Assembly: GCA_002269645.1 (NCBI GenBank)
Contig: NIVC01001560.1
Coordinates: 14,338-78,337, forward strand
Direction: 5' to 3'
Length of the DNA: 64,000 bases
DNA from: Macrostomum lignano
Lineage: Eukaryota
The position numbers were made by a program, and so were the translations under genes. Every line of letters starts with the position of its first letter. Position 1 is the first letter of the stretch. Below, one piece after another: positions 3,570 to 61,282 of this stretch. The notes under the pieces were generated by a model that was given only the letters and a program-made list of their open reading frames with translations, had not been told where the DNA came from and did not search any database.

Positions 3570-4298
3570 GCGAGCAATGTATCAAATTATAAGTCACCAA
3601 TTTTAGCGCCAAATATATCAAATTATAAGTCACCAATTTTAGCGCCAAATATATCAAATTATAAGTCACCAATTTTAGCGCCAAATATATCAAATTATAA
3701 GTCACCAATTTTAGCGCCAAATATATCAAATTATAAGTCACCAATTTTAGCGCCAAATATATCAAATTATAAGTCACCAATTTTAGCGCCAAATATATCA
3801 AATTATAAGTCGCCAATTTTAGCGCCAAATATATCAAATTATAAGTCACCAATTTTAGCGCCAAATATATCAAATTATAAGTCACCAATTTTAGCGCCAA
3901 ATATATCAAATTATAAGTCACCAATTTTAGCGCCAAATGTATCAAATTATAAGTCGCCAATTTTAGCGCCAAATATATCAAATTATAAGTCACCAATTTT
4001 AGCGCCAAATATATCAAATTATAAGTCACCAATTTTAGCGCCAAATGTATCAAATTATAAGTCGCCAATTTTAGCGCCAAATATATCAAATTATAAGTCA
4101 CCAATTTTAGCGCCAAATATATCAAATTATAAGTCACCAATTTTAGCGCCAAATATATCAAATTATAAGTCACCAATTTTAGCGCCAAATATATCAAATT
4201 ATAAGTCACCAATTTTAGCGCCAAATATATCAAATTATAAGTCACCAATTTTAGCGCCAAATATATCAAATTATAAGTCACCAATTTTAGCGCCAAAC
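3570..4298. repeat. 36-bp AT-rich minisatellite (atatatcaaattataagtcaccaattttagcgccaa), ~20 copies
   Basis: Near-identical tandem units ending ~190 bp upstream of the ATG at 4492. Confidence 0.97.
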
Positions 4299-4491
4299 TA
4301 GCCAATGAAGATGGCCCAACCATCCTCAGCCACTTATCGGTATCCAAGGAAACAAAAATATCAAATAAATGAACCCAGTCTCAACATGAAAGCTTAACTC
4401 CCAGAGCAGTCTGAGCTCCCTAAGATTAACATCCGAAGAAGCTGAGGATTTCACAGGTGAAGACAAGCGGAGAAATTCGAAACATTTGGAA

Positions 4492-6255
4492 ATGCCAGCT
4501 GGAATTCTAGCGCTGCTGTTCGGCTGCATGGCTACCGTGACAGGTGAGGCTTCTCATGCATGTTTGTCAAATGCACTGAGCGCCTGCGAATGCGTAACGT
4601 AGTCTCTATTTAACTAAATCTGAATAGATTTCTAAACCTACAAAACATCAAGAATTGAAAATTTTTAGAGTTGTCAACCACCTTTGTAAACTGCTGTGAT
4701 GGCGCAGCCACAGTTTTCAATGCACAGAATCTCCTCCAACCAACAGGTGCGAACCGATCCGGCTGCTTCACTGCCGTCACCGGACCCGTCCTGATCAGCG
4801 AAACCTCCAGCAGCGAACTCGTCAACCTGACTGGCGTCCAGGCCCGGCTGGAGTGTCTGGCAGCTTGCCAACGCAAGGGCTGCCTGCTGGCTTCGCTCAT
4901 TCCCAGCTCGCGCGTCTGCCAGCTGCTGCTGCTGAACGACGCGTCTCAGGCGCCGGGACCGGCTGGGACTCACGAGCAGAGACTCGTGGGCTCCGAGCCC
5001 GGCGCCAGGCTGTGGGCGGCCGAGAACTTCACGGAGCTGATGCTGATGAGGAAGAGGATGCTGAACGTCACCATTGAGCTCAAAAGTGAGGAAAAGCTCA
5101 TGTTTGCAAAGTTTCTGTGCTTCAAGCATTTGCTGCACCTTGACATCTGATCTGCAGCGCCTTCTTTCACTGCAGACAGCGGCACGGGCAGGGCCGGCTC
5201 CATTCAGTCCGTGACGATCCCCTCGACCGGCTGCTATTGGATCGAAGTGTCGGGCGCCAGAGGCGGCACCAACTCCTTCTCAGGCAAGGCTGGCGGCAGT
5301 GGCGCCTTCGTGTCCGGCGCCTTCAACCTGACGGCCGGCACCCAGCTGAGCGTCGTGGTCGGACAGGCCGGCGGTCCGCCTAGCTCGAAGTACAAGGGAG
5401 GCGGCGGAGGCGGCGGCAGCTTCGTGTACCGGACGGCAGACGAGCTGCTGCTGGCTGCAGCCGGAGGCGGCGGTGCCGGGACCTACAGCTCAGCTGGTGA
5501 GTCAAAAATTCTTCAGGAAAAACTGCAGAAAGCAAATCTTCTAAAAGCTCTCCGACTTTTAAGTGTTTAGCTTATTCTTGTGCCTGGTTTGCAGTTGATG
5601 TCAATTTTCGATAGAGTTGACATCAGGTCCGAACACGAAATCAGTTCGATTCCATGTGGCAAAAAACTTGAACTTACCAAATTGGGCTGCTCAAATTTTA
5701 TTTGTTTTTGTTGGCCGGTTATATTGGATTTATTGAAGGTGAGCCATGAGCAACGAATTTGCAGGCCTGCCCGGAGAGGCCGGCGTCAACGGCTCCATCG
5801 CGGATCTGAGCGGAAACCAAAACAGCCACGGCGGCAGCAACGGACAGCCGGGCTTCCACGACTCCAGCGCCATGACCGGCAACCAGAACCTCGCTGGCTG
5901 CGGCGCCGGCTGGCTGGGGAAGCCGGTGTGCACCAGGCGGGGACCGGACGACGGTGACGGAGGCGGCAGTCGGGCTGAAGGCTGGCTGGGCGGGGACGCT
6001 GGCGGCTCCAACACCGGCAACGGCGGGTTCGGCGGCGGTGGAGGCGGCGGCACGACAAACCCCAACTTTGGCGCTGCCGGGGCCGGCGGCGGCTTCAGCG
6101 GAGGCGCCACCAACTTCTGGGCGAGCTACCCAGGAGGCGGCGGCGGCTCCTTCTGCTCCGGCAGCGGCTGCAGCGGCACCACGGGCGGCAGCGCCAGTCA
6201 GCACGGCCTGGTGGTCATCCGGCTGGTCGAGCCGCTGAGCAACTCTTGCGAGTGA
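4492..6255 (+). CDS. Secreted protein: signal peptide + PAN/apple-like module + ALK/LTK-type glycine-rich domain; 4 exons
   Basis: Exons 4492-4543, 4669-5085, 5176-5496 and 5744-6255, all joined by GT..AG phase-1 introns. Signal-like MPAGILALLFGCMATVT. PAN-like CLAACQRKGC...C. GRD motifs SIQSVTIPSTGCYWIEVSGARGG, GAFVSGAFNLTAGTQLSVVVGQ, GGGGGGSFV, LLLAAAGGGG, GGFGGGGGG and HGLVVIR. The exon 4 acceptor is uncertain. Confidence 0.82.
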
Positions 6256-6874
6256 CGTTTTCATGGAAACTGGACATTGTCCAGCGAAACTGAGACTGCG
6301 TTGTTGTAGGAGTGGAATACTGTGCAGTTTTTAGAGAAATTTTCAGGTCTTTACTTTTTTATTAACGACTGTTTCCGCTACAAGCCGAACACTATCAAGT
6401 CTAGGTGAAGTGGATAGACTTTGGCACCTGCTTTTATGCCTATTATGATTGACTCGTGCGAGACCAGTAAATTAGCAATAATCCTTGCCTCAGTTTAATC
6501 TCGTGTTGTATTCTTGCACTTTTGTTTCAGTGCAACGACAGGGCACCCCATCCTTTAGTCGTTGTGGTGACTCAGTTAGTTAGTCCCCCCTTGCGTCTTG
6601 GCTCAAGCTGTGGCGCTTCATGCGCCATGCACAAGACTGAGTTTTCGTATGGCTTAATCTTTAGCCGTTAGTAGTTTAACCCCCCTTTCCCAGTTCTCCT
6701 TATTGTCACAAATTTTGTGTCTTGCGTGTACTTTTTGTTGTTTACTACATTTCTGATTGGCTGGGCCGGCGGCGGGCTGGTGTTTCCTTTCCCCTTTTGG
6801 TGGGGTGGACCCCCCTTCCTCGGGCCGTGGCGCGGGGTTTCGCTTTTTCGTGCTTTGATTCACTCTCCTCGTCA

Positions 6875-7010
6875 GCCGGAAAGCTCTTACTGCGAAGTCT
6901 CAATCTAGTGCGATTTGCACACTGAAACACTGAATAAAGAGAAACCAAGTCCCGTTAGAGACATACTGAGGCTTAACGGCCCGCGTGTGCCAGCGCCTGT
7001 TGCCAATTGG
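6875..7010 (+). other. Spliced-leader-like sequence (6875-6911) heading a putative non-coding first exon that ends at a GTGAGT donor (7011)
   Basis: gccggaaag-ctcttactgcgaagtctcaatctagtgc resembles the Macrostomum SL as I recall it (GCCGTAAAGACGGTCTCTTACTGCGAAGACTCAATTTATTGCATG): 25/28 in the core and 8/9 at the 5' end, with a 5-nt gap. A reverse CCAAT box and GC-rich tract lie upstream (6740-6870). Confidence 0.6.
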
Positions 7011-7867
7011 GTGAGTATGCTGCTCTGCGTTCATTCTTTCTGTTGTCTTGGGATTCGGAGCTACGACTAACTAACGTAGAATAGAGGGTTACACTGGTAC
7101 GGCACTTGCTTTATTGTACGCCTGTCTGCACTACCCCAGACATCACGGGTCTGTGTATCAATACTGTAGCCTGTTGGCTTTGGATCCAGGGATACACTAC
7201 TCTCTTGACATCTGAAATACTTTAGTTTGTTAGTAGTTCTTATGAAGGGGTTTAAATTTGCATTTTTCACTTCCTCCACAATCCCATTAAGTCTTAAAAG
7301 GCTCATTAAAACAATTAAAAGGCTCATTTTCTTAAAAAAAACATTTCAGGAATCAGGATTCACCATGAGAAACCATTTAAGAATCGGCACTTTGACACCC
7401 TACTTTGGCACCTGTCCGTCTCAATAAGATATATATATAGACAGGGAAGAGCGCTGAGTCTCCAGCAGACCTTGCAGGCGGCTGATGCACCCAAATCCTT
7501 GCGATGGTGTTGGGGTAGACAGCCGCAGCATTAATTTCACACCCTAATGGAACAGCCCAGCACAGACTGCACATCCATACACTGTTGCTGCAATATCTGC
7601 GCCTGGTTAAGCAGGTAAAATCTCTACCTGAAGATGTATTTATATTAGCAGATACGTTAGTATTTTTATAAGAATATGAATTCACGCTCTACCTATGAGC
7701 TGGTTATTCCAATCCGGTATGCGTAAGCAAGGCGTATTCGTGCATTCTCTATCCAAAAGGATTCCGTAGGAAACCATGCTTACCATTTCCGTGCTGTGAA
7801 ATGCACGCTTGTGTCACTGAAACACGGGTTGAGCTGCGCATTAGCCCTCTAAACTGCTTGAATACTG

Positions 7868-8115
7868 GAATCATGAGAATCCTGAGATCTTGAGAATCCT
7901 GAGAATCCTGAGAATCATGAGAATCCTGAGAATCCTGAGAATCCTGAGAATCCTGAGAATCCTGAGAATCCTGAGAATCATGAGAATCCTGAGAATCCTG
8001 AGAATCCTGAGAATCATGAGAATCCTGTAAATCCTGAGAATCCTGAGAATCATGAGAATCCTGTAAATCCTGAGAATCCTGAGAACCATGAGAATCATGA
8101 GAACCATGAGAATCT
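7868..8115. repeat. 9-bp tandem repeat (gagaatcct), ~27 copies
   Basis: Direct periodicity with cat/taa variants. Confidence 0.95.
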
Positions 8116-9833: not shown

Positions 9834-10259
9834 TCATATGCTTCCGATGGTGGGCAGATTGTCGGGACTGCTCTGACCATTCTGCATGTACTGCATGCAC
9901 AGGTGCTCGGCGAATCCTGCCTGAACCAGCGGGGTCGGAGACTGGCTGCCACCGCCGCCGCCACCGATGCTGCCTGCTGGACTGCCGGCGCTGCCAGTCT
10001 CCTGTTTGAGCATGTAGGAGGAGGCCGCGGCGGCGGCGGCTGTCATGTAGCCGGGGCCGCCAACCATTCCTGACATGCCTGGAGCTGCGTAGGCGGCGTA
10101 GGCGGCTGGCAGGTGCGGCAGGTAGCTGCCATAGTGCGACATGTTCATCATGTTGGAGGCGGCTGCCTGCTGCTGCTGCTGCTGGTGATGATGATGGTAG
10201 GCCGCAGTCGGATCCATGCTGCCCAGATGATGATGGTGATGATGGTACTGCTGCGGTTG

Positions 10260-10334
<75 letters not shown>

Positions 10335-13300
10335 GTGATGAGGCATGTACGGCTGGGTGCTGTACAATTCCCTAGGCAGAGGCTGGGCAACGGCTGCTCC
10401 AGGGGCCGCAGCCGTATAGCGATCCTGCCGCTTCAACAGGGTCTTCGTCTTGCGCCTCGGCCGGTACTTATAGTCCGGGTGGTCCTTCATGTGGATGGCG
10501 CGCAGCCGCTTGGCCTCATCAATGAACGGGCGCTTCTCAGTCTCGCTGAGACTCTTCCACTCGGCGCCGAGACGCTTGCTGATCTCCGAGTTGTGCATCT
10601 TCGGGTTCTCCTGGGCCATCTTCCGGCGCTGACCCCGGCTCCACACCATGAAGGCGTTCATTGGGCGCTTGACGCGGTCGTCCTTTCGGCCAGACGAGTC
10701 GCCTCCAGATGCGGCGGTTCCGGCGGAGCCCTTCACCGATGACGTCATTGCCGGAGACAGCAGGCTCAGGTGGCCGACAGGGGTGCACTGCAAAGGCACA
10801 GGCAGGCAGGGGGGCTCTTCGGGCATTAATGACGCAAAACTTGCAGCAGAACAAGCGGTGGCCCTCTTTGAGCGCGGTAAAGTTGGTCTGAAGCCACCTG
10901 TGGCCCAGTGTCTAGGGATAATTACTGACTGGTTCCCTTTGGACAGCCGGGGACTGCCGTAAAGTGTGGAAATTACGTAACGCAGAATTATATGAGGTAC
11001 ATAGGGTGATTTATCTTCGTGATATTCAGAAATCTTTCATGAAAAGTACTCGTATAGAATGAGTGGGATTCTTAGAGATTTAAATTCTTATAGGGACCTG
11101 TTTTTAAACCGTTCTTTTTATCCCCTACTTACCTACTATCAACTTACAGATGCATCCACTATTATACTAACTTCAGCTGCCGATCCATCTATCTATCTAC
11201 CTACCTACCTACCTACCTACCTACCTACCTACCTACCTACCTACCTACCTACCTACACACCTACCTACCTACCATACTACCGATTAAAATACCAACCTAC
11301 CACCAAAAACTGCCCAATATTTTACAGTACTGCCCCTGAAAAAGCTTCTGGAAGGGTTCGAAATCCAAAAACTGTTAGCTACCCAAGAAAACAAACTCCT
11401 ACAGAGTGAAATGCACATTTTTAATTGAGGAATATTGACTAGCAAAAGACTCTTGAAATTCTTGCCCCTGCCCGGCAAAGCGGGGAAAAAAGCATGAGCA
11501 TAGAGGATGAGAGGCAAGTACTGCTCCGACAGAAGTGCACCCCGGGGGCCCCTAATGACAGCTTTTTTTCTCGAGGCGCGCAGGTGTGCTTTTGCGTGCG
11601 AGACTTTCCCCACACATTTGCAGCAAGCCAGCCAGCCAGCCAGTCTCTCTACTTTGCTCCCATCACTTTTTCTGCTTCCCTCATTCCCCGCTGAGGGTGT
11701 ACGGCACACGGTGAGACTGACAATGGGCCACGGGCGCAGCCGTAGCCTAGTTACCTAGCCATGACAAGCTGCCAGACTGGAACACTACGGCTGATGGCGC
11801 TCACTAAGGGTTGACAACTCGAAGGGGGATGGAGAGCGGAGCAGAGGCGGGATCCCAAACTCCCCCACCCACCCAAAATTATTGCTATGGGACCCCCCGC
11901 GGCGCTGGCATGCAGGATGTGGGGACTCGACGCCCACCGCCGCCGCCCCCCTCCCCAAGGGGTCCGCCCGAGCGACAAGAATTTTAATATAATAACGACA
12001 AGATGGAGCGAATTTTTTCATTATGAACTACGACGCAAAAGCGGAGGGGAGCCGCAGCGCTGCGGGGGGCTCGCTGGTTGAGAGGCTAAGTGAAGCCAGC
12101 GAGCACCTGTCCCAGCCCTATAGTCCTTCTCACTTGTCACCTGTCTTATCTCCCCTGTCTTATCTCCCCTGTCTTATGTCCCCTGTCTTATGTCCCCTGT
12201 CTTATGTCCCCTGTCTTATGTCCCCTGTCTTATGTCCCCTGTCTTATGTCCCCTGTCTTATGTCCCCTGTCTTATCTCCCCTGTCTTATGTCCCCTGTCT
12301 TATGTCACCTGTCTTATCTCGCCTGTCTTATGTCTCCTGTCTTATGTCCCCTGTCTTATGTCCCCTGTCTTATCTCACCTGTCTTATCTCACCTGTCTTA
12401 TCTCACCTGTCTTATCTCACCTGTCTTATCTCACCTGTCTTATCTCACCTGTCTTATCTCACCTGTCTTATCTCACCTGTCTTATCTCACCTGTCTTATC
12501 TCACCTGTCTTATCTCACCTGTCTTATCTCACCTGTCTTATCTCACCTGTCTTATCTCACCTGTCTTATCTCACCTGTCTTATCTCACCTGTCTTATCTC
12601 ACCTGTCTTATCTCACCTGTCTTATCTCACCTGTCTTATCTCACCTGTCTTATCTCACCTGTCTTATGTCCCCTGTCATATGTCCCCTGTCATATGTCCC
12701 GTCTTATGTCCCCTGTCCCCTGTTTCATGTTCGCCGTCTTATATCCCCTCTCGATTGTCCTATGTCTCCTGTCCTATGTCCCCTGTCCTATGTCCCCTGT
12801 CCACTGTCCTATTTCCCCTGTCAACTGTCCTATGTCCCCTGTCCACTGTCCTATTTCCCCTGTCAACTGTCCTATGTCCCCTGTCCACTGTCCTATGCCC
12901 CCTGTCCACTGTCCTATGTCCCCTGTCCTATGTCCCCTGTCCTATGTCCCCTGTCCTATGTCCCCTGTCCTATGTCCCCTGTCCTATGTCCCCTGTCCTA
13001 TGTCCCCTGTCCTATGTCCCCTGTCCTATGTCCCCTGTCCTATGTCCCCTGTCCTATGTCCCCTGTCCTATGTCCCCTGTCACTCACTGAAGCGGAGTTA
13101 TTAGACGCCATCGCGGGAGTTGACGCAGGTGACATGTCCTCGCCCATGTCTCCGCCGCCGGCACCGCCGCCGTTGCACGAGTCTCCGCTCAAGCTGTTGT
13201 CTCCGCCGTCGCCGCCGCCGCCCTGAACGCCGCCAACGCCAAGAAGATGATGCTGTCTAAGATCGTCCGGCTGCAGCTGCTGAGGCTGCAAATGCTGATG

Positions 13301-19984: not shown

Positions 19985-20968
19985 AAGGATTTAAAGAGAG
20001 GGGATCTAAGAGGGAGGGGACCTATAGAGAGGGGATCTAAGAGGGAGGGGACCTATAGAGAGGGATCTAAGGAGACGGGATCTAGGGAGAGGGGATCTAG
20101 GAAGAGGGGATCTAGAGAGAAGGGATCTAGGGAGAGGGGATCTAGGGAGAGGGGATCTAGAGAGAAGGGATCTAGGGAGAGGGGATCTAGGAAGAGGGGA
20201 TCTAAGGAGTGGGATCTAAGGAGTGGGGATCTAAGGAGTGGGGATCTAAGGAGTGGGGATCTAAGGAGTGGGGATCTAAGGAGTGGGGATCTAAGGAGTG
20301 GGGATCTAAGGAGTGGAGATCTAAGGAGTGGGGATCTAAGGAGTGGGGATCTAAGGAGTGGGGATCTAAGGAGTGGGGATCTAAGGAGTGGGGATCTAAG
20401 GAGTGGGGATCTAAGGAGTGGGGATCTAAGGAGTGGGGATCTAAGGAGTGGGGATCTAAGGAGTGGGGATCTAGGGAGTGGGGATCTAAGGAGTGGGGAT
20501 CTAAGGAGTGGGGATCTAAGGAGTGGGGATCTAAGGAGTGGGGATCTAAGGAGTGGGGATCTAAGGAGTGGGGATCTAAGGAGTGGGGATCTAAGGAGTG
20601 GGGATCTAAGGAGTGGGGATCTAGGGAGTGGGGATCTAAGGAGTGGGGATCTAAGGAGTGGGGATCTAAGGAGTGGAGATCTAAGGAGTGGGGATCTAAG
20701 GAGTGGGGATCTAAGGAGTGGGGATCTAAGGAGTGGGGATCTAGGGAGTGGGGATCTAAGGAGTGGGGATCTAAGGAGTGGGGATCTAAGGAGTGGGGAT
20801 CTAAGGAGTGGGGATCTAAGGAGTGGGGATCTAAGGAGTGGGGATCTAGGGAGTGGGGATCTAAGGAGTGGGGATCTAAGGAGTGGGGATCTAAGGAGTG
20901 GGGATCTAAGGAGTGGGGATCTAAGGAGTGGGGATCTAAGGAGTGGGGATCTAAGGAGTGGGGATCTA
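19985..20968. repeat. 15-bp minisatellite (ggggatctaaggagt), ~50 homogeneous copies after a degenerate block
   Basis: Direct periodicity. Confidence 0.97.
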
Positions 20969-21511
20969 ATACTAAATAGCCTAATTCCAGTTCCCATTCC
21001 TCAATAATTGTTAACCGCCATAAATAAAAACTAAGCAAGACAACAAATTTTGCTTTTCTGTTGCCAATAAAAATAACGAATTTCTTTGGAAACCGAAGAA
21101 ACGCACAGAATCAAAATGAGTCAGAGAGTTCACGAGGATCCCAGGGCCATTGATAGTAAAAAAATAGAGGCTGCTTAAGGCAGCAGCAATTTTAAAGGGA
21201 TTAAGGCCCGCATTTCCCCGATCGGCAGTGATGAGGACAGGAGAGACTGGGGAGCGGGGCCCGATGAAGGTGATGGTACTGATGCTGAGTCCCCGGGATC
21301 TGATAAATTTCGCAAGTGCGGGAGCAGGCGTGCAGCCTGAATCAGAAATATTCATCATATGGCTTTTTAATAACGCTACTATGCGTTACCAACCCTACTG
21401 ACTCTTGCTGACTCCGGCAAGCATGAATTGAAATTAGTCAATTGAGTTGCTGAGGGCAGGAGGCCAATGTCAGTACACAGATACATCACTTTATCTGTTT
21501 TATTTGTCCAA

Positions 21512-26875: not shown

Positions 26876-28717
26876 TCACGGGTGCTGGCACCGACCGCCC
26901 ATAGAGTTGCATAGGCTGTACACCTGCTGCTTGAAGTAGGTGTTCATGCAGCCGTAGATGATTGGATTAACGCCGTGGTTAATAAAATAGCAATAAAATA
27001 TGATATTAACAATGATATCCTTGAGCCTGTTGCTCCAATTCGAGAACTTGTCAACTTCAAGTTTAGAGGTGAAATTTCCGGTGGAAGTTGATAAAATCTG
27101 GATTCTGCCGGAGCCGGGCCAGCTGGGGCTGGGCCAGCCGCTGCTGCTGTTGTTGCTAGCGGCCACTACAGGCCCTGAGCTGTCGGCATCCCAGCCGGGG
27201 CCCCAGTGAGCATTGTACACGAGCAGAAATGGCAGGTAGGATAACACGTAGAAGAACGTGATGACACTCAGCACTTTAGCGGTTTTAATATGCGGCCGTT
27301 TGCGCGCCCGTTCGGCCAGATCGCGACGCGCCTGCGCCAGCTGCACTGACCCGATTGAGTTGTCGCGCGCTGAGGTCCAGGAACGGCGCTGCGGCTGCTG
27401 CTGCTTCGACAGGCGGCGCTGCTTCACCTCCTCTTGCACTGCGGCCGGGTCGGCGGCTTCAGCTGCGTCCTCCTCCTCAACAATCCTGTCTGAGCCCGGT
27501 CCGGTGTCAGCCTCATCTTTAACTAGTCCAGCCTCCTCGGCTGGGACCTTCTCAGCTACTAGCGACTCAGCCGCTCCATCATTAGTTGGAGCAGTCAGCA
27601 TCAGCACTTCATCAATGTTAGTCTCCAGGCAGCAGTCCGACACACCTGCTGACGCGGAGGCATCGGCGCCGTTAAGGGCTGCCAGCGCCGCGGCCACGGC
27701 CGACGCGCCTCCATGGTGACTCATGAGCTCCACACCGGCGCAGGTGGTCACCTCCGTCTCTTCAGCGCGCGACGACAGGCGCCGGACAACGCGTCGCTTT
27801 TTTTTCTTGTCGCCGGCGCCCCTACCGGCGCATTGGCCGCCTCTGCTGCAGGCACCGCCGCAGCTGAGCTCAGCTGAGCAGCGGCCCGCTTTCGATCCGA
27901 TCGAGTGCTCAACCGGGCAGTCGCCGCTAGACATCCGGGCTGCCTTGCACCTGCTCTTGCTCCGGCTCCGGCTGCCGGCGTGGGCCACCCAGGAGCGCGA
28001 CCGGGCCCACCGGTGCTGCCGGCGCCGCACAAACGCAAAAATGTTGGCGTAGAAGAACAGCAGCAGCAGCAGAGCGCAGGCGAACAGCACAGAGAGGCCG
28101 GTCTTGTACGCCTGCATCACTGGGGTGCTCACCAGCTCGTTGTCGGTGGTGCAGTAGGCCACGGGCAGCTCCACGCCGCCGTCGGCCAGTTCAATGCGCA
28201 TCCTGGTGCCAGTTGTGAGGCCGCCCGGTACACCGACAGCGCAGCCGAGACCCACCGCCAAGGCCACGTAGGCCAGGGAGCTGCGCCGGCCGGTCTGCAC
28301 GCCGGGCACGAAGCAGATGATGACGAACCGGTCCACAGCGATGAGGCAGAGCAGAAAAGCCGACGATGGCACCAACGAATAGCGAAGGATGTGGAAAAGT
28401 TTGCAGCACAGCTCCGAGCTAGACCTGTGCCAGACGTCCTGGTAGAGAGTCGACGGGATGACCACAGCGCATACCAGCAGGTCCAGCACCGCCAGTGCGA
28501 TCACGTAGACATTCTGAGGCAGGTCGCGGAGGCTGCGGTGGAAGAACACAATGACCAGACTGTTGCCAACAATGCCGAGCAGGGAGATCAAGCACAGGCA
28601 GACTGTGATGCAAATCAGTAGCGAATTTGGCATCCGATTTTCAGCTCGACGTCTTTCGATCAGTTCGGCCAGGTGGATTTTGTACAGGTCGGGGTGAACA
28701 GAGGTCCAGTTGGCCAT
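26876..28717 (-). CDS. Intronless class A (rhodopsin-like) GPCR, peptide-receptor type, 613 aa
   Basis: Seven hydrophobic segments; TM1 GN, TM2 LAxxD, TM3 C and DRF, TM5 Y, TM6 SYLP, TM7 NPIIY; N-terminal NWT sequon; ICL3 of ~250 aa. Confidence 0.93.
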   Translation of the reverse strand: MANWTSVHPDLYKIHLAELIERRRAENRMPNSLLICITVCLCLISLLGIVGNSLVIVFFHRSLRDLPQNVYVIALAVLDLLVCAVVIPSTLYQDVWHRSSSELCCKLFHILRYSLVPSSAFLLCLIAVDRFVIICFVPGVQTGRRSSLAYVALAVGLGCAVGVPGGLTTGTRMRIELADGGVELPVAYCTTDNELVSTPVMQAYKTGLSVLFACALLLLLFFYANIFAFVRRRQHRWARSRSWVAHAGSRSRSKSRCKAARMSSGDCPVEHSIGSKAGRCSAELSCGGACSRGGQCAGRGAGDKKKKRRVVRRLSSRAEETEVTTCAGVELMSHHGGASAVAAALAALNGADASASAGVSDCCLETNIDEVLMLTAPTNDGAAESLVAEKVPAEEAGLVKDEADTGPGSDRIVEEEDAAEAADPAAVQEEVKQRRLSKQQQPQRRSWTSARDNSIGSVQLAQARRDLAERARKRPHIKTAKVLSVITFFYVLSYLPFLLVYNAHWGPGWDADSSGPVVAASNNSSSGWPSPSWPGSGRIQILSTSTGNFTSKLEVDKFSNWSNRLKDIIVNIIFYCYFINHGVNPIIYGCMNTYFKQQVYSLCNSMGGRCQHP

Positions 28718-30859: not shown

Positions 30860-32075
30860 ACGTGGCACAGAGGGCGGCGCGCATATAAAAAGCGGGTGAG
30901 CAAACCCCCACACCACGGAGAAGTATAGAGGGCGGCGCGCAGATAAAAAGCGGGTGAGCAAACCCCCACCCCACCCCACCCCACGGAGAAGTATAGAGGG
31001 CGGCGCGCAGATAAAAAAGCGGGTGAGCAAACCCCCCACCCCACGGAGAAGTATAGAGGGCAGCGCGCAGATAAAAAAGCGGGTGAGCAAACCCCCACCC
31101 CACGGAGAAGTATAAAGGGCGGCGCGCAGATAAAGAGCGGGTGAGCAAACCCCACCCCCACCCCACCTCACGGAGAAGTATAGAGGGCGGCGCGCAGATA
31201 AAAAAGCGGGTGAGCAAACCCCCCACCCACGGAGAAGTATAGAGGGCGGCGCGCAGATAAAAAGCGGGTGAGCAAACCCCCACCCCACCCCACCCCACGG
31301 AGAAGTATAGAGGGCGGCGCGCAGATAAAAAAGCGGGTGAGCAAACCCCCCACCCCACGGAGAAGTATAGAGGGCGGCGTGCAGATAAAAAGCGGGTGAG
31401 CAAACCCCCCACCCCACGGAGAAGTATAGAGGGCGGCGCGCAGATAAAAAGCGGGTGAGCAAACCCCCCACCCCACCCCACCCCACGGAGAAGTATAGAG
31501 GGCGGCGCGCAGATAAAAAGCGGGTGAGCAAACCCCCACCCCACCCCACTCCACGGAGAAGTATAGAGGGCGGCGCGCAGATAAAAAAGCGGGTGAGCAA
31601 ACCCCCCACCCCACGGAGAAGTATAGAGGGCGGCGTGCAGATAAAAAGCGGGTGAGCAAACCCCCACCCCACGGAGAAGTATAGAGGGCGGCGTGCAGAT
31701 AAAAAGCGGGTGAGCAAACCCCCACCCCACCCCACCCCACGGAGAAGTATAGAGGGCGGCGCGCAGATAAAAAAGCGGGTGAGCAAACCCCCCACCCCAC
31801 GGAGAAGTATAGAGGGCGGCGTGCAGATAAAAAGCGGGTGAGCAAACCCCCCACCCCACGGAGAAGTATAGAGGGCGGCGCGCAGATAAAAAGCGGGTGA
31901 GCAAACCCCCACCCCACCCCACCCCACGGAGAAGTATAGAGGGCGGCGCGCAGATAAAAAGCGGGTGAGCAAACCCCCACCCCACCCCACCCCACGGAGA
32001 AGTATAGAGGGCGGCGCGCAGATAAAAAAGCGGGTGAGCAAACCCCCCACCCCACTGAGAAGTATAGAGGACGGC
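30860..32075. repeat. ~56-70-bp GC-rich minisatellite (ggagaagtatagagggcggcgcgcagataaaaagcgggtgagcaaacccc(cac..)n), ~20 copies
   Basis: Direct periodicity. Unit length varies through (cccca)n and the A-run. Confidence 0.97.
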
Positions 32076-33102
32076 GCACAAAGGCGGCACAAAGTACATC
32101 GCAAGGAGGGGTGGATGGCTAACACCCATTTCACTCCAGGCTCACAAAGGAGCCCTAAGAGAAATGGAGGCATCAAAAGTTTTCCAAGGTGAATTTCTAA
32201 ATAATTGCTGCTACATCTGCTCCTAGTAGAAATACGAGACAGATAAAGCACAAGTTGCCCTTTTGTAGCCACACAATATAAGTATAATGTTGCCTAAACG
32301 AAAACAAAAATTCATATCGCCTAAAAGACCCCGTCAATTTTGGCGATCAATACTTCAATTTTTCAATATTCGAGTCCAAGTTAAAAATTTTGGAAACAAA
32401 ATTTGTCATGAATAAAATCATAAGGTAGTGATGGTTGCCAATGCTTGCGCAAAAAAAGTTGCACAAAATGTCAGCCGGCTGTTCTTTTAAAGATTTTGCC
32501 AAGCTTGATGAAACCGAGACGTGCTCCACTGGCGCACTGCTCAGCCGGGCGACTTGCCGCAGGGCCTGCGGGCCAGAACCCAACCGCCTGCAGTTGGTGA
32601 CGTGAAGAAAATCACAGGAAATGCTCTCCAATACAAAGACACTGGGACTCGCTTCTGCAAAGAGAAAAAAAACGTCCATCTGACTATTCGACAGATTTCG
32701 AACTGCCCAGCTCTCTCTCTCTCCCGGGATCCCGGGACGCGTGCGAGACAGTCGAATGAGGCAATAAAATGCTACAAAATGCTCTCGGGATGGGCCAGGG
32801 ACTACTGAATGAATCTGGAACTGCTTTTTTACAACTAGAGGTCATTCAATAATCCCTATTGTCGAAGTGCAAAATACTTAATAATTTTTAAACAAAAGCG
32901 TTCGATTTCTAGAAATTGGTGACACATTTTCGAACTGAATAAATTATTTCGTGCGAGCCGGAAACACCAGCCAACTCTCGCGCCACAGTTACAGGCTTTT
33001 TAGTGCGCGCCTAGTCACGTTAATTTATTGTTTGCGGCTGGCAGCGTGATTTACGTCCATGAGGGAACAAGGCAACAGAGTGAGGTGATGAGAAACCGAG
33101 AC

Positions 33103-40871: not shown

Positions 40872-44664
<3,793 letters not shown>

Positions 44665-49124: not shown

Positions 49125-52100
49125 ATGGTACACACGAGGCGATCCGATGCCCTCGAGATAAGTGGCAGCAGAGGCTGCGGCGCCGGCAGCAATGCCAGCG
49201 CCTCTCCAGTGTTTAACAATCGAAAATCTGGCGGCAGTGCCACATCACCGCAGCGTCAGTTGCAGCCTCTGCAGCAGCCTCATCATCATAACCATCACCA
49301 CCATCATAGCCATCATCACCAGCAGCAGCAGGACTATGACTCCAGGCCAGATGGTCGCCCGAGAAGACTAGCCGCCAGTGAGAATGGTGCTCATATTGGC
49401 GACAGTCGGAAGCGTCGCCTGCGATACGCCGTCAGCACAGAGGATGAGGAGGATGAAGATGACGAGGATGAGCACGAATTGGTTGGCAACGGAGGGCTGG
49501 GTCACAGCGAAGACGACGATGGAGAGTCTTTAGATAGACGTAGCCGGCAGCCTCGACGCGTCGTTGAACGACTGTCGCGCCGGCGCAGCCGACAGCAGAA
49601 GCGGCCGCGTCGGCACCTTCAACAGAGTGACGTTGATGAAAACGTCGACGAAGATGACGAGGAGGATGATGCAGAGCAGGCAGCTGAGGCGGCGACGGTG
49701 TCGAAGAATGCGACAGACGAGCAGCAGCAGCAGCAGTTCTCCGATATGTACACCCGGGTGAAACGGCCGCGCAAGAAGTTCATCCGCGACATGTACGGCC
49801 AACTAGTTGCCGTCGAGAATCAAGTCAGCGCCAAGGGTCGACGCCGCAACAGAGAGGCAGAGGAAGAAGAAGACGACGAGGAAGAGGGCGCCACCGAGGA
49901 GGACGCTGCCGGGGGAGGCGGCGGCGGCCAGCAGCGTCGGCCGTACCAGCTCAGACAGCACAGGCGGCGCACCGACGTCTACCAGACGTCGGCCTACGAA
50001 GCCATGCCACGTCGGAGTCGCGGAGGCGGAGTCGGCGGCGTCGGCAGCAGCCGGGAAGCGTCTTACCGGCGTCGCCAGCGCTCGTCGTCCGGTCGAGCTT
50101 GTCGCCGACGTCGCCGATCGCTTCAAAGAAATCGGCACGGCTCGTCTAGCACCGAGTCGTCCTCGTCGTCGTCCTCCGGCTCTGACTCAGCCGACGACAA
50201 TGCCAACGATGAGCGTCGATTTTTGCGTCGAAAGAATCGCAGCATGGCCAAGGCTAGACTGCGCTGTCTGCCGATGAATCTGGCCATGCAGGATGCGGAA
50301 CGGGGCATCCGTCGGGACCGGTCAAAGATTGGCGCCAGTCTGGCCGACGTCGATCCGATGTCGATCGACACCGGCGTCACATTCGAATCGATTGGCGGCC
50401 TCGGCGACCATCTGCGCTCGCTGAAAGAGATGCTAGTATTTCCTATGCTGTACCCGGAGGTGTTCGCCCATTTGAGAGTCGATCCGCCCCGCGGCGTACT
50501 GTTCTACGGGCCGCCTGGCTGCGGCAAGACTCTGGTTGCCAGGGCTCTGGCTAACGAATGCGGCCGGGCCGACGCCAGGCGCAAAGTTGCCTTTTTTATG
50601 CGCAAAGGCGCCGACTGTTTGAGCAAATGGGTTGGAGAGAGCGAGAGACAGCTCAGGCTGCTGTTTGATCAGGCCTATCAGATGCGGCCTAGTATTATCT
50701 TCTTTGACGAGATTGACGGCTTGGCGCCAGTAAGATCGACTAGACAGGATCAGATTCACAGTTCCATTGTGAGCACTCTGCTGGCGCTGATGGACGGCTT
50801 GGATGCTCGCGGGGAGGTGTGTCTTTTATTTTCGAATATATTGAGAATATATTAGATTATTGCTGTTATATTCCTCTGTGTTGTTACTGATGGATGCATT
50901 GAGCACAATTATCTAGTTTTATTGGTTGCTATGGTCGCTAAGTACATCCTATTGTTGGTTTCTATGGGCGCTATATACGTCACTGTTTTTGGTTGCTATA
51001 GTCGCTGAGTACACCTTAGTGTTGGTTGCTATGGGCGCTGAGTACATCTTAGTGTTGGTTGCTATAGGCACTGAGTACATCTTAGTGTTGGTTGCTATGG
51101 GCGCTGAGTACATCTTAGTGTTGGTTGCTATGGGCGCTAAGTACATCCTATTGTTGGTTGCTATGGGCGCTAAGTACATCCTATTGTTGGTTGCTATGGG
51201 CACTGAGTACATCTTAGTGTTGGTTGCTATGGACGCTGAGTACATCTTAGTGTTGGTTGCTATAGGCACTGAGTACATCTTAGTGTTGGTTGCTATGGGC
51301 GCTAAGTACATCTTAGTGTTGGTTGCTATGGGCGCTAAGTACATCCTATTGTTGGTTGCTATGGGCACTAAGTACATCTTAGTGTTGGTTGCTATGGGCA
51401 CTGAGTACATCTTAGTGTTGGTTGCTATGGGCGCTGAGTACATCTTAGTGTTGGTTGCTATAGGCACTGAGTACATCTTAGTGTTGGTTGCTATGGGCGC
51501 TAAGTACATCTTAGTGTTGGTTGCTATGGGCGCTAAGTACATCCTATTGTTGGTTGCTATGGCCACTAAGTACATCTTAGTGTTGGTTGCTATGGGCGCT
51601 AAGTACATCTTAGTCTTGGTTGCTATGGGCGCTAAGTACATCTTAGTCTTGGTTGCTATGGGCGCTGGGTAAATGCTAGTGTTGGTTGCTATTGACAGGT
51701 ACATCAGTAGTATTTATTTTTCATCATTCTTCATAATTCATAATGGTTGCTATGGCTGCCCCAGGTGATCGTGATCGGTGCCACCAACCGGCTGGACAGC
51801 ATCGATCCCGCGCTGCGCCGTCCCGGCCGATTCGATCGGGAGCTTCGTTTCTCGCTGCCTAACGAAGCAGCCCGTTTGGAAATTCTTCGTCTACATCTCG
51901 GACACTTTCAACTGTCCGAGGAGACGCTGCGCTCGGTGGCCGAGTCTACAGCCGGCTATTGCGGCGCGGATCTGAAAGCCTTGAGCACCGAGGCCGGCCT
52001 GTCCGCGCTTCGCCGAGCTTATCCGCAGATCTACTACAGCAAGGATAAACTGCTGCTGGATAATGCCAGAATCTCAGTTAGCGCCGGAGATCTGACCGCC

Positions 52101-54387
52101 GCTCTTGTCCGAGTCCGGCCAGCCGGACAGCGATCCACGCCGGCCGTGGCCCGGCCGCCCCCGGCCTATTTGAATCCGCTCTACTCGGAAGCGGCCGCGG
52201 ACGCTGCTGACCGGCTTCGTCAGCTGCTGGCCGCCAGGCCGGCCGGCCGGCCGAGTGGAAGCCAACGCCGGCTAGTCATGCTGCTCGGACAGACTGGCGA
52301 CTGTCTAGCCAAGTATCTGGGCCCGGCCATTCTGCACCGAATGGAATCCTTGCCGGCTCACTGCCTAGATCCGGCCGCTCTGTACGCTTCGGCCAGTGTC
52401 CGCTGTCCGGAAGAGGCCGTGGCCGATCTGTTTCGCGAGCTCCGTCGCGCCGCCCCAGCCGCCTTGTACGTGCCGGCTTGCGACTCGCTGTTCGGCGACT
52501 CGTCAACTGGCGGCCTGTCGGACACGGTGCGTCGCTGCCTGCTGGCAAGCCTTCGTGACTTCGATCCTTCGCTGCCGCTGCTGGTGCTCATGACTCGCGA
52601 GTGCATCAATCTGGACGCTGACGAAATCGGCGATTCGTTTCAGCCGCCCGACTGGCTGGACTGCTCGTCTGAGGATCTGGTCACCGTCCGGGTGCCAAGT
52701 CCAACTGACGCTCAGCGACGGGCCTTCTTCAGCGATATGGTGCTCAATGCTGCCACGGTGCTGGATGATGCCGACGGCGGTGTCGGCTGCGGCAGCGGCG
52801 GAGAACTTCCGCCAGCCGAGTCGCTGCCGCCGCTGCCGCTGGCTCCGGCCAGTCCGCCGCCCGCGCTGACCCGGCTGAAGCCAAGCGACTCGCCCGTAGA
52901 GAGGAGGGGCAACTGCGAGAGTTGAGAATCTTTCTGCGCGATACTTGCAACAAGCTGGCTAGGTGAGTCGGGTGAAACCGTCTTGCGTGCTTTTAGACTA
53001 TGGCTCCTCTCATTTTGATCCTTTGAATTTCACAATATTCTAAAACTTTTAGAACCACCATAATTCTGAAACTAAAGTGTGCTACAATTATACCATCATG
53101 AGCAATCATCTTGCATCTTCCAGAACCTTCAGATCCGCCATCCTGAACCTTCAGATCCATCAGCCTGAACCTTCAGATCCACCATCCTGAATCTTCAAAT
53201 CCGCCATCCTGAACCTTCAGATCCATCAGCCTGAACCTTCAGATCCGCCATCCTGAACCTTCAGATCCATCAGCCTGAACCTTCAGATCCACCATCCTGA
53301 ATCTTCAAATCCGCCATCCTGAACCTTCAGATCCATCAGCCTGAACCTTCAGATCCGCCATCCTGAACCTTCAGATCCATCAGCCTGAACCTTCAGATCC
53401 ACCACCCTGAACCTTCAGATCTTCCATCCTGAACCATCTGATCCATCATCCTGAACCTTCAAGCCCATAATCCATTTGCCTCCTTGACCCCTCAGAGACC
53501 GCCGATTCTTCGTATTCGCTAAGCCGGTGACAGACGTCGCTGACTATTACGACATCATCAAGAATCCCATGGACCTGGCCACCGTGATGGACAAGATCGA
53601 TCGCGGCGACTACTGCTGCGCCGAGGACTTTCTAGCCGATGTAGACTTGATCTCTCGCAACGCCTTGGAGTACAACCCGGTCACCGACGACGAGTCCGTA
53701 GCCATCCGACACCGCGCCTGCGCCCTACGCGACGTCGCCCAGGCCATCGTGAAAGCGGAGATGGACTCCGACTTCGAGGACGACTGTAAACGAATTCGCG
53801 ATCGTCGACGCGACGACGGTGCACCTGCCGCCGCTGCTACCGGCCAAACTGCTGCGACAAAGAAATCCTCGCTTTCAACTCACCCGTCTACTAACGGACC
53901 AACCCGGCAACAGCATGGCAACGGCTGTTTGAGCGGCAGCAACAGTGGTAGTGGAGTGTCTCGCGCCGATCGGTACAGCCGCAGATCCGCCACTGTTGCC
54001 ACTTCGGCGACAAATGATGCTGAAGCTGAGACAGCAAGCGCTGCTGCTGCTGCAACTCCCACTACTAGACGGTCTTTGTCAGCTTCTGCCAGCCCTCCAC
54101 AGCAGCAGCAGCCGCCGGCTGCTCAGCCGTCATCGTCAGCTGCCGGTGGCTCTCCGTATCGTCAGCCGGATGCCATGGTGGTTAGAAACCGGCTGCAGAA
54201 CCTGCTGAACCAGCTGGTCAGTCGGACGGCTAGTCTGACCAGGCAGCAGCTGGACTCTGCCTACACTCGACTGAGTGACTGTCTGGCCGGACTGCGGACT
54301 GCTAATTCCACTGCCGAACAGCAGCAGCCACAGTTTGCTGATCAAGTGTGCGCCTCTATTGAAAACTTCATCCAGACAATTGCTTAG
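49125..54387 (+). CDS. ATAD2: ATAD2/Yta7 AAA-ATPase + bromodomain protein, 3 exons (49125-50816, 51765-52962, 53496-54387); needs one extra nt at ~52871
   Basis: Acidic/Arg-rich N-terminus; DRSKIGASLADVDPM; Walker A GPPGCGKT; FFMRKGADCLSKWVGESERQLRLLF; Walker B IIFFDEID; GE|VIVIGATNR; PALRRPGRFDRE; degenerate second AAA; LRELRIFLRD in a shifted frame; bromodomain KNPMDL...NALEYNP...IRHRACALRD. Confidence 0.95.
50920..51695. repeat. 30-bp minisatellite (ttggttgctatgggcgctaagtacatcttagtg-type) in ATAD2 intron 1
   Basis: Direct periodicity, ~25 copies. Confidence 0.96.
53123..53462. repeat. 22-bp minisatellite (atcc(g/a)(c/t)ca(t/g)cctgaaccttcag) in ATAD2 intron 2
   Basis: Direct periodicity, ~15 copies, most ending in CCTTCAG. 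Confidence 0.95.
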
Positions 54388-59517: not shown

Positions 59518-59967
59518 ATTGTCCATGAGCAGTTCGAAGCAACAGGAAACCCGTGCGTATGCATACAGTATGGAATGGAACAGGCAGGGGGTTCTGCCGG
59601 GACGAGGCCCTAGATGAATGCTTCAGAGGCGGGCACAGCCTGGTGCAGTGCTGACAGCTAAGCTGAGGGGGGGCCATGTGATTTTTACCGGCTGTCACTG
59701 ACTGCGCGCTGGCTATCTGCTGGGTAGAAAATTTTCTCTTTTGACAGCTCGGTGATAGAATGTCTGTACATGTATGCTATAAAATATATCAAAATTCAGT
59801 CGCTTGACAGAAGCTCAAAACGAAAATTTAGCCATTTGCCGAAGGCACACGCATTAACATATCGGTAAGTAATGAATTAATCGTTTATACAGCCTTTAGG
59901 GAGTTTTACACTGCTTAGAATTGTGTAGCTCGTACTGGTAAGAAAAAGGCGTTTAAAATCGCCGGGT

Positions 59968-61282
59968 TCAGGTCCGGTTTGTTTCCGGTCTATTAAGTTT
60001 CCGGTCCTGTTAGTTTCCGGTCCGGTTTGTTTCGGGTCCATTAAGTTTCCGGTCCGGTTAGATTCTGGTCCTGTTAGTTTCCGGTCCATTAAGTTTCCGG
60101 TCCTGTTAGTTTCCGGTCCGGTTTGTTTCGGGTCCATTAAGTTTCCGGTCCTGTTAGTTTCCGGTCCGGTTAGTTTCCGGTCCATTAAGTTTCCGGTCCT
60201 GTTAGTTTCCGGTCCGATTTGTTTCCGGTCCATTAAGTTTCCGGTCCTGTTAGTTTCCGGTCCGGTTTGTTTCCGGTCCTGTTAGTTTCTGGTCCTGTTA
60301 GTTTCTGGTCCTGTTAGTTTCTGGTCCTGTTAGTTTCCGGTCCTGTTAGTTTCCGGTCCTGTTAGTTTCCGGTCCTGTTAGTTTCCGGTCCTGTTAGTTT
60401 CTGGTCCTGTTAGTTTCCGGTCCTGTTAGTTTCTGGTCCTGTTAGTTTCTGGTCCTGTTAATTTCTGGTCCTGTTAGTTTCCGGTCCTGTTAGTTTCCGG
60501 TCCTGTTAGTTTCCGGTCCTGTTAGTTTCCGGTCCTGTTAGTTTCTGGTCCTGTTAGTTTCCGGTCCTGTTAGTTTCTGGTCCTGTAAGTTTCCGGTCCG
60601 GTTAGTTTCCGGTCCGGTTAGTTTCCGGTCCATTAAGTTTCCGGTCCTGTTAGTTTCCGGTCCGGTTTGTTTCCGGTCCATTAAGTTTCCGGTCCTGTTA
60701 GTTTCCGGTCCGGTTTGTTTCCGGTCCTGTTAGTTTCTGGTCCTGTTAGTTTCTGGTCCTGTTAGTTTCTGATCCTGTTAGTTTCCGGTCCTGTTAGTTT
60801 CCGGTCCTGTTAGTTTCCGGTCCTGTTAGTTTCTGGTCCTGTTAGTTTCCGGTCCTGTTAGTTTCTGGTCCTGTTAGTTTCTGGTCCTGTTAGTTTCTGG
60901 TCCTGTTAGTTTCCGGTCCTGTTAGTTTCCGGTCCTGTTAGTTTCTGGTCCTGTTAGTTTCCGGTCCTGTTAGTTTCTGGTCCTGTAAGTTTCCGGTCCG
61001 GTTAGTTTCCGGTCCGGTTAGTTTCCGGTCCATTAAGTTTCCGGTCCTGTTAGTTTCCGGTCCGGTTTGTTTCCGGTCCATTAAGTTTCCGGTCCTGTTA
61101 GTTTCCGGTCCGGTTTGTTTCCGGTCCTGTTAGTTTCTGGTCCTGTTAGTTTCTGGTCCTGTTAGTTTCTGGTCCTGTTAGTTTCCGGTCCTGTTAGTTT
61201 CCGGTCCTGTTAGTTTCCGGTCCTGTTAGTTTCCGGTCCTGTTAGTTTCTGGTCCTGTTAGTTTCTGGTCCGGTTAGTTTCC
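59968..61282. repeat. 16-bp minisatellite (gtttccggtcctgtta) with higher-order duplicated blocks
   Basis: Direct periodicity; ccattaa/ccggttt variant patterns recur about every 420 bp. Confidence 0.96.

What the first reader, a model, noticed from the sequence alone, without database searches (positions are those of the whole stretch)
6875..7010. Spliced-leader-like sequence encoded in the genome at the head of a cis-spliced exon
Seen: gccggaaag ctcttactgcgaagtctcaatctagtgc (6875-6911) follows a reverse CCAAT box and GC-rich tract. About 100 nt later comes a canonical TTGG|GTGAGT donor. Recalled knowledge: the Macrostomum SL is GCCGTAAAGACGGTCTCTTACTGCGAAGACTCAATTTATTGCATG; the match is 25/28 in the core and 8/9 at the 5' end, with ACGGT deleted. 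Unlike a true SL RNA gene, it lacks the terminal ATG|GT and any nearby Sm site. Inference: three options are (a) a retrocopy of a trans-spliced RNA, (b) an SL-derived first exon that gives a transcript a leader by cis-splicing, or (c) a divergent SL paralogue or SL-associated mobile element. A locus that supplies its own leader would be an unusual route out of trans-splicing.
Basis: partly seen in the sequence, partly recalled or inferred. Interest (0 to 1): 0.8.

Follow-up and report, generated by a model that had tools for sequence, protein, structure and literature searches.

The report
Relict spliced-leader copy in flatworm genome
A real but degraded single copy of the Macrostomum trans-spliced leader sits between two genes; it is most likely the fossil 5' end of an old reverse-transcribed RNA, not a working leader gene, and nothing yet shows it is reused as an exon.

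Summary
Window 6875-6911 aligns to the published 45-nt Macrostomum spliced leader (SL) from its first base to base 42. The match is 8/9 plus 25/28, with a 5-nt deletion that removes the 3' arm of SL stem-loop I. Chance is excluded.

I recovered two true Macrostomum-type SL RNA genes from public contigs (L004, L006). They share an identical SL, ATG|GTAAG, a conserved intron half with ATTTTTAG between two hairpins, and a stable fold.

The window copy has none of these beyond the leader. Similarity stops at the SL/intron boundary. There is no donor there, no Sm-type site and no fold signal, and a covariance model of the true genes does not find it. So it is not an SL RNA gene or a whole-gene duplicate.

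An exon-only copy starting at SL base 1 points to an RNA intermediate. The only poly(A)-signal-plus-A8 combination in the 128 kb of both strands lies 460 nt downstream on the same strand. Best reading: a decayed retrocopy of about 467 nt (6875-7341) of a trans-spliced RNA.

The "self-supplied leader by cis-splicing" idea is untested. The donor is good, but no coding exon follows. Relict genomic SLs are already known, so interest is modest.

The parts
6875..6911 (+). SL-like segment. It corresponds to SL bases 1-42 with 4 substitutions and a 5-nt deletion (ACGGT, the 3' arm of SL stem-loop I). An alternative MAFFT alignment extends the match to 6919 through a 7-nt insertion (GTGCGAT, 6908-6914) followed by TTGCA (6915-6919). 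In that alignment CA replaces the final TG of the SL's ATG.
   Evidence: published SL
6912..7333 (+). Body of the proposed retrocopy. It is non-coding or decayed, with stops in all three frames. It shows no similarity to the SL RNA intron half. It contains AATAAA at 6933-6938 and the donor-like GTGAGT at 7011-7016.
7305..7341 (+). Candidate retrocopy 3' end: ATTAAA at 7305-7310 and 7314-7319, then an A8 run at 7334-7341. This is the only A[AT]TAAA-plus-A8 combination on either strand of the window.
7011..7016 (+). Donor-like GTGAGT preceded by GG. If it is used, 6875-7010 would be a 136-nt ATG-free first exon.
   Evidence: M. lignano donor motif GT[G/A]AG from PMC8629364
7344..7427 (+). Acceptor-like TTTCAG ending at 7349, then CACC-ATG at 7365 opening only a 20-aa ORF (stop at 7425-7427). 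It lies just outside the proposed retrocopy.
6753..6874 (+). Upstream tract with a reverse CCAAT (ATTGG, 6756-6760) and about 60% GC. It is not alignable to the upstream flanks of the true SL RNA genes, and its CpG o/e is unremarkable.

Best explanation
The segment is a relict, DNA-encoded copy of the spliced-leader exon. It marks the 5' end of an old retrocopy of about 467 nt (6875-7341).

Proposed history: a transcript that had received the SL by trans-splicing was polyadenylated, reverse-transcribed and inserted between two convergent genes. It has since decayed by 4-5 substitutions, one or two indels, loss of the SL's ATG, and loss of any ORF.

Shown: the homology is real. It is confined to the SL exon. 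The features of an SL RNA gene are absent. A poly(A)-signal/A-run lies downstream on the same strand.

Inferred: the RNA intermediate, the 3' end of the insert, and the present lack of function.
For: 1. Real homology to the SL from base 1 to base 42 or 43.

2. Two true SL RNA genes recovered here (L004:615-722 and L006:1589-1694) are 91% identical over the whole gene of about 110 nt, while their flanks are unalignable. The intron half is therefore strongly conserved. The window shows no similarity to it beyond shuffles (p 0.26-0.73). Exon-part identity is about 88%, so the similarity ends at the splice junction, as expected for a spliced product.

3. The functional SL is invariant in three named Macrostomum species and in 6 environmental sequences. 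The window copy is degenerate and has lost the stem-loop I arm and the ATG.

4. The only A[AT]TAAA-plus-A8 site in 128 kb (both strands) lies 460 nt downstream on the same strand. That is roughly 0.4% if one such site were placed at random.

5. Precedent exists. DNA-encoded SL remnants are the accepted tag of retrogenes in dinoflagellates (PMC6050394, PMC12014239). Partial-leader loci attributed to retro-integration, and SL-RNA pseudogenes, are reported in parasitic flatworms (PMC12582326).
Against: No target-site duplication abuts the proposed ends. The only candidate is a 7-mer, GATTCAC, 11 and 15 nt away from them.

No parent gene could be sought, because no genome of this species or a close relative is reachable with these tools.

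The body has no ORF or Pfam match, so it cannot be recognised as an mRNA.

The A8 run is short. An AATAAA also lies at 6933, so the 3' end is ambiguous.

LINE-mediated retrocopies are often 5'-truncated, whereas this one is full-length at its 5' end.

The species' own SL was not determined.
Confidence: 0.6

Rival explanations
1. Exapted first exon. Whatever its origin, the SL-like block now heads a transcript that starts near 6875. That transcript would be cis-spliced from 7010|7011 to an acceptor such as 7349, so it would carry an SL-like 5' leader without trans-splicing.
For: GG|GTGAGT fits the M. lignano donor motif GT[G/A]AG (PMC8629364), and such a site is expected within 150 nt only 2-5% of the time. 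There is no ATG in 6875-7016. The acceptor TTTCAG at 7349 is followed by CACC-ATG. ATTGG and a GC-rich tract lie upstream.
Against: The ATG at 7365 opens only a 20-aa ORF. No + strand ORF longer than 66 aa lies between 7011 and 9700, and none has a Pfam match. Beyond that lies a Sox gene on the opposite strand. ATG-free 142-nt stretches make up 29% of the window. [CT]TNCAG acceptors are common, and CpG o/e is at the 68th percentile. The leader copy is degenerate and cannot form SL stem-loop I. No transcript evidence is available.
Confidence: 0.15
2. SL RNA gene, variant SL paralogue, or SL RNA pseudogene made by DNA duplication.
For: The similarity begins exactly at SL base 1. Upstream flanks of true SL RNA genes are not conserved even between the two true genes, so the lack of upstream similarity does not exclude a DNA-level copy. 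A mini-copy with a similar deletion lies next to a true gene in L004:601-613.
Against: There is no GT at the end of the leader and no Sm-type site within 325 nt. No similarity to the conserved intron half was found. The fold z-score is -0.9 or +0.7, against -3.0 for a true SL RNA. Covariance model R1, built from the two true genes, does not list the site among 16 hits at E<=10 with filters off. The copy is single and not in an array.
Confidence: 0.07
3. Fragment of a mobile element, such as a non-autonomous retroelement, whose transcript had been trans-spliced before integration. In that case it would be one member of a dispersed family rather than a one-off retrocopy.
For: This is the explanation proposed for 597 partial-leader loci in parasitic flatworm genomes (PMC12582326). 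The body is non-coding.
Against: No reverse transcriptase, integrase or other Pfam domain occurs in any ORF from 6.6 to 9.8 kb. No second copy of 6400-7500 exists in the 64 kb. No terminal repeats stand out: the best inverted pair is 11 nt, with about 0.2 expected by chance.
Confidence: 0.12
4. Chance resemblance, or an assembly or cDNA-contamination artefact.
For: None specific.
Against: The exact 21-mer has 0.01 expected matches, and the independent 8/9 block has P of about 1e-3. Contamination by cDNA would carry the canonical leader, not a diverged one with indels.
Confidence: 0.02

Closest known systems
Relict DinoSL at the 5' end of dinoflagellate retrogenes (PMC6050394, PMC12014239, PMC5585692)
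   Same: A genome-encoded, often degenerate spliced-leader remnant marks the 5' end of a sequence that passed through a trans-spliced RNA and reverse transcription.
   Different: In dinoflagellates the remnants head recognisable, often expressed protein-coding retrogenes and can be stacked. Here the body is short (about 420 nt), has no ORF and no identified parent, and the host is a flatworm.
Partial-leader loci and SL-RNA pseudogenes in parasitic flatworm genomes (Calvelo et al. 2025, PMC12582326)
   Same: These are flatworm loci whose only SL RNA feature is a partial leader sequence. The authors interpret them as integrated copies of trans-spliced retroelement transcripts. They also report pseudogenes that lack the AUG or the donor.
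   Different: Those loci were linked to annotated LTR or LINE repeats. No repeat or reverse-transcriptase signature was found here. This host is a free-living macrostomid relative.
Macrostomum SL RNA gene (109 bp in M. lignano, PMC8629364; L004 and L006 here)
   Same: It shares bases 1-42 or 43 of the leader at about 88% identity.
   Different: It lacks ATG|GTAAG, the conserved intron half, the ATTTTTAG Sm-like site, the three-hairpin fold, the stem-loop I 3' arm and any multi-copy arrangement.
M. lignano locus Mlig013257.g1 (noted in PMC8629364)
   Same: That paper reports that the SL RNA sequence published earlier maps to the 5' end of a protein-coding gene. A leader sequence at the head of a gene has therefore already been seen in this genus.
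   Different: That case is described in one sentence and concerns an annotated trans-spliced coding gene. I could not retrieve it for comparison.

Membership tests
SL RNA gene (Macrostomum type) | Leader exon sequence present | tested here: met
   Partly met: bases 1-42 at 33/37 identity, with a 5-nt deletion.
SL RNA gene (Macrostomum type) | Leader ends in ATG followed at once by a GTAAG donor | tested here: not met
   The window has GCGAT or GCACA where true genes have GCATG|GTAAG.
SL RNA gene (Macrostomum type) | Conserved intron half with an Sm-like site (ATTTTTAG) between two hairpins | tested here: not met
   No similarity beyond shuffles. No Sm-type motif in 6875-7200.
SL RNA gene (Macrostomum type) | Stable multi-hairpin fold; matches a covariance model of true genes | tested here: not met
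   z = -0.9 and +0.7, against -3.0 for L004. Model R1 does not report the site at E<=10. The model rests on only 2 sequences.
SL RNA gene (Macrostomum type) | Leader found on mRNAs of the species | not testable with these tools
   No transcript data for the source species. In three public collections only the canonical A-variant was found.
Retrocopy tagged by a relict spliced leader | DNA-encoded leader that starts at SL base 1 and ends at the SL/exon junction, without SL RNA intron sequence | tested here: met
Retrocopy tagged by a relict spliced leader | Poly(A) signal and poly(A) remnant at the 3' end | tested here: inconclusive
   ATTAAA twice plus an A8 run at 7305-7341. This combination is unique in 128 kb, but the run is short and an AATAAA also lies at 6933.
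Retrocopy tagged by a relict spliced leader | Target-site duplications abutting the insert | tested here: not met
   Only a non-abutting 7-mer was found. Decay could have erased a short duplication.
Retrocopy tagged by a relict spliced leader | Intron-containing parent gene elsewhere that matches the body | not testable with these tools
Protein searches found no near-identical proteins of this species.
Cis-spliced first exon of an expressed gene | Transcription start at about 6875 and a 7010^acceptor junction in RNA | not testable with these tools
   No RNA data. Only sequence motifs could be checked.
Cis-spliced first exon of an expressed gene | Downstream exons with coding capacity or conservation | tested here: not met
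   A 20-aa ORF only. No + strand ORF longer than 66 aa up to 9700, and no Pfam hits.

The most novel reading that the evidence does not exclude
The relict leader has been co-opted. A promoter upstream, or the leader itself acting as an internal promoter element, starts transcription at about 6875. The 136-nt ATG-free exon is then cis-spliced from GG|GTGAGT onto a downstream acceptor that would otherwise be a trans-splice site. The transcript would thus acquire an SL-like 5' end without the SL RNA. That would be a concrete example of a gene leaving trans-splicing by hard-wiring its leader.
Probability: 0.1. Interest if true: 0.6.

Novelty: new member of a known kind. Interest (0 to 1): 0.3.

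Why it matters
Relict leaders are timestamps of RNA-mediated insertion. In animals with SL trans-splicing they could be used, as in dinoflagellates, to list retrocopies and to measure how often trans-spliced RNAs re-enter the genome.

For annotation it is a caution. A leader-like string in the genome is not an SL RNA gene. M. lignano's first published 'SL RNA' was such a mis-assignment (PMC8629364).

As a by-product, this work recovered two complete Macrostomum-type SL RNA genes from environmental contigs. They define the conserved intron half and the Sm-like site, and they give a usable test for true SL RNA genes in this group.

Tried and rejected
Rfam. There were no hits in the window at gathering scores or at permissive E-values around the site. 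The true SL RNA gene in L004 is not hit either, so Rfam has no model for this RNA and its negative result means nothing.

Species identification and orthologous loci.
- Exact look-ups of the Sox and GPCR ORFs were not on record.
- All three homology searches (Sox, the Apple/Gly-rich gene, ATAD2) found no near-identical protein.
- The two top ATAD2 hits were double-AAA artefacts.
- The only taxonomic signal is that the 10 best hits of the Apple/Gly-rich gene are M. lignano proteins at 38-54% identity. These have no contigs on record, so no homologous locus could be fetched.

Promoter homology with true SL RNA genes. One shared motif, TTTCTG(A/C)TTGGCTG, gave p of about 0.017 in one scoring scheme. 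It was not significant under others, and the two true genes do not share upstream sequence with each other. I dropped it.

Other checks that led nowhere.
- The viral contig scan gave nothing.
- There are no tRNAs.
- Inverted and direct repeats around the site are no better than chance.
- An antisense role in the Sox 3' UTR was considered and set aside. Minus-strand AATAAA signals (TTTATT on the + strand at about 8736 and 7111, read) precede the site.

Full report
**The observation**

Window 6875-6911 reads GCCGGAAAGCTCTTACTGCGAAGTCTCAATCTAGTGC. M. hystrix and M. lignano (PMC5173321; PMC8629364) have the same sequence.

A 21-mer is exact. With up to 3 mismatches the window holds one match against 0.01 expected. 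Given the core, the 5' block adds an independent P of about 1e-3. It is the only copy in the 64 kb, and the surrounding 1.1 kb is unique in the window.

The following also check out:
- the donor GG|GTGAGT at 7010|7011;
- the upstream ATTGG at 6756-6760;
- the absence of ATG|GT at the end of the leader;
- the absence of any Sm-type motif in 6875-7200.

The deleted ACGGT is the 3' arm of the first SL hairpin (GCCGU-AAAG-ACGGU), so the copy cannot form that hairpin.

**A reference for what a true gene looks like**

No Macrostomum genome is reachable with these tools, and Rfam has no model for this RNA. Even the true gene below is not hit, so the Rfam negatives for the window carry no weight.

A pattern scan of public collections gave six loci.
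- Four contigs from one sample (L001, L002, L003, L005) are transcript-like. They begin with the canonical leader, which runs ...TTGCATG straight into different exons.
- Two contigs carry complete SL RNA genes: L004:615-722 and L006:1589-1694. L006 is labelled as a Flavobacteriaceae MAG contig.

These two genes share:
- an identical 45-nt leader;
- ATG|GTAAG;
- a conserved intron half (GTAAGACACCG.TGATCCAAT..TGGATC..TATTTTTAGCAGCCCT...GGGCT);
- the Sm-like ATTTTTAG between two hairpins.

This matches the description of the 109-bp M. lignano gene (PMC8629364). The two contigs are alignable only over about 117 nt, at 91% identity. Their flanks, including the upstream regions, are not alignable. 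The L004 RNA folds with z = -3.0.

**The window copy against that reference**

Similarity covers SL bases 1-42. MAFFT's alternative alignment extends it to base 43, with a 7-nt insertion and CA in place of the final TG.

Beyond that point the window sequence is no more similar to the conserved intron half than shuffled sequence is (p 0.26-0.73 under three scoring schemes). Upstream shows nothing robust either. One motif reached p of about 0.017 under one scheme only, and true genes do not share upstream sequence with each other.

The window segment does not fold better than shuffles (z = -0.9 for 106 nt and +0.7 for 136 nt). A covariance model built from the two true genes and run with filters off over the whole window does not list the site among 16 hits at E<=10, and it finds no SL RNA gene anywhere in the window.

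The locus therefore fails every defining feature of an SL RNA gene except partial leader sequence. If a whole-gene DNA duplicate had decayed evenly, it would still show its intron half at roughly the 88% identity seen in the leader part. It does not.

**What that implies**

A copy that consists of the leader exon only, begins at the RNA's first base and ends at the splice junction is what a spliced product looks like. It points to derivation through a trans-spliced RNA and reverse transcription.

I looked for the other hallmarks of such an insertion.
- On the + strand the window has only five A runs of 8 or more. One is at 7334-7341, preceded by ATTAAA at 7305 and 7314.
- The combination of A[AT]TAAA 5-40 nt upstream of an A8 run occurs once in the 128 kb of both strands, and it is this site, 460 nt downstream of the leader on the same strand.
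- No target-site duplication abuts the proposed ends.
- The body (6912-7333) has stops in all frames, and the one ORF within it that was scanned has no Pfam match.
- An AATAAA also lies at 6933.

The functional leader is invariant in three named species and six environmental sequences. This copy has 4-5 substitutions, one or two indels and no ATG, which fits an old, unconstrained relic.

The locus lies between two convergent genes. One encodes an Apple/glycine-rich secreted protein and ends at 6255 on the + strand. The other is a SoxB1-like gene on the - strand at 9834-10826.

**The cis-spliced exon idea**

In favour:
- GG|GTGAGT fits the M. lignano donor motif, and such a site is expected within 150 nt only 2-5% of the time.
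- There is no ATG in 6875-7016.
- A TTTCAG acceptor ends at 7349 and is followed by CACC-ATG at 7365.

Against:
- That ATG opens a 20-aa ORF.
- No + strand ORF longer than 66 aa, and no Pfam match, occurs before the opposite-strand Sox gene.
- ATG-free 142-nt stretches make up 29% of the window.
- Acceptor motifs are common, and CpG o/e is ordinary.

Without RNA data this reading is neither shown nor excluded. I give it about 0.15, including non-coding transcripts.

**Species**

The organism could not be named. The 10 best hits of the Apple/Gly-rich gene are all M. lignano proteins, at 38-54% identity. Searches with Sox and ATAD2, and exact look-ups, found nothing near-identical. The source is therefore a relative of M. 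lignano whose own proteins are not in the collection. Its own SL was not determined. This is the main caveat on the statement that the copy is diverged from the functional leader.

**Comparison with what is known**

DNA-encoded leader remnants are the standard tag of retrogenes in dinoflagellates (PMC6050394, PMC12014239, PMC5585692). In parasitic flatworms, hundreds of partial-leader loci have been attributed to integrated trans-spliced retroelement transcripts, and SL-RNA pseudogenes lacking the AUG or the donor have been described (PMC12582326). In M. lignano the first published 'SL RNA' was later found to map to the 5' end of a protein-coding gene (PMC8629364).

The present locus is therefore a new member of a known kind. 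It is not a member of the SL RNA gene family, because defining features were tested and not met.

**Verdict**

- Observation: confirmed.
- Interpretation: option (a) favoured at about 0.6, plus about 0.12 for a mobile-element variant of the same mechanism. Option (c) is rejected as an SL RNA gene. Option (b) is untested and weakly disfavoured.
- Interest: 0.3.

Noticed in passing
L006:1589-1694 (JAGQZA010000190.1): A contig deposited as 'MAG: Flavobacteriaceae bacterium HKST-UBA79' carries a complete Macrostomum-type SL RNA gene. The contig has 38% GC. It is most likely flatworm DNA mis-binned into a bacterial MAG.
   Followed up: partly
L004:601-613, just upstream of the true SL RNA gene at L004:615-722: A 13-nt mini-copy, GCCGTAAACTCTT, equals SL bases 1-8 joined to bases 15-19. 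It has lost GACGGT, almost the same stem-loop I arm deletion as the window copy (ACGGT). This could be a recurrent slippage across the hairpin or a trace of a minor leader variant.
   Followed up: no
L001, L002, L003, L005 (sample Ga0316592): Transcript-like environmental contigs that begin with the canonical Macrostomum leader joined at ...TTGCATG to different exons. One of these exons (L001) looks VDAC-like by eye. This indicates macrostomid mRNA in a public meta-omic sample.
   Followed up: partly
window, whole length (e.g. 22-2316, 3576-4297, 12135-13081, 19987-20969, 30869-32077, 43187-44287, 59967-61282): The window is unusually dense in tandem arrays. About 30 arrays have a TRF score of at least 300, with periods from 4 to 442 nt. 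Many create long spurious ORFs on both strands.
   Followed up: partly
window 7860-8114: A 9-nt tandem array, (GAATCCTGA) x about 29, lies between the SL-like element and the Sox gene. It produces a false 128-aa ORF on the - strand, with weak and meaningless Pfam hits.
   Followed up: yes
window 4490-6255 (+): A multi-exon gene for a secreted Apple/PAN-like plus glycine-rich (ALK/LTK-type, PF12810-like) protein. Its 10 best database hits belong to an expanded M. lignano family at 38-54% identity.
   Followed up: partly
window 9834-10826 (-); 26876-28717 (-); 49125-54387 (+): Three further genes: a single-exon SoxB1-like gene with long poly-Q/His tracts, a 613-aa GPCR-like ORF, and an ATAD2-like AAA+/bromodomain gene whose introns hold tandem arrays. 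None has a near-identical protein in the 5.8-billion-protein collection.
   Followed up: partly
window 7294-7307 and 7315-7328: A perfect 14-nt direct repeat, TTAAAAGGCTCATT, spaced 21 nt start to start. This local duplication is why the ATTAAA signal ahead of the A8 run appears twice.
   Followed up: no
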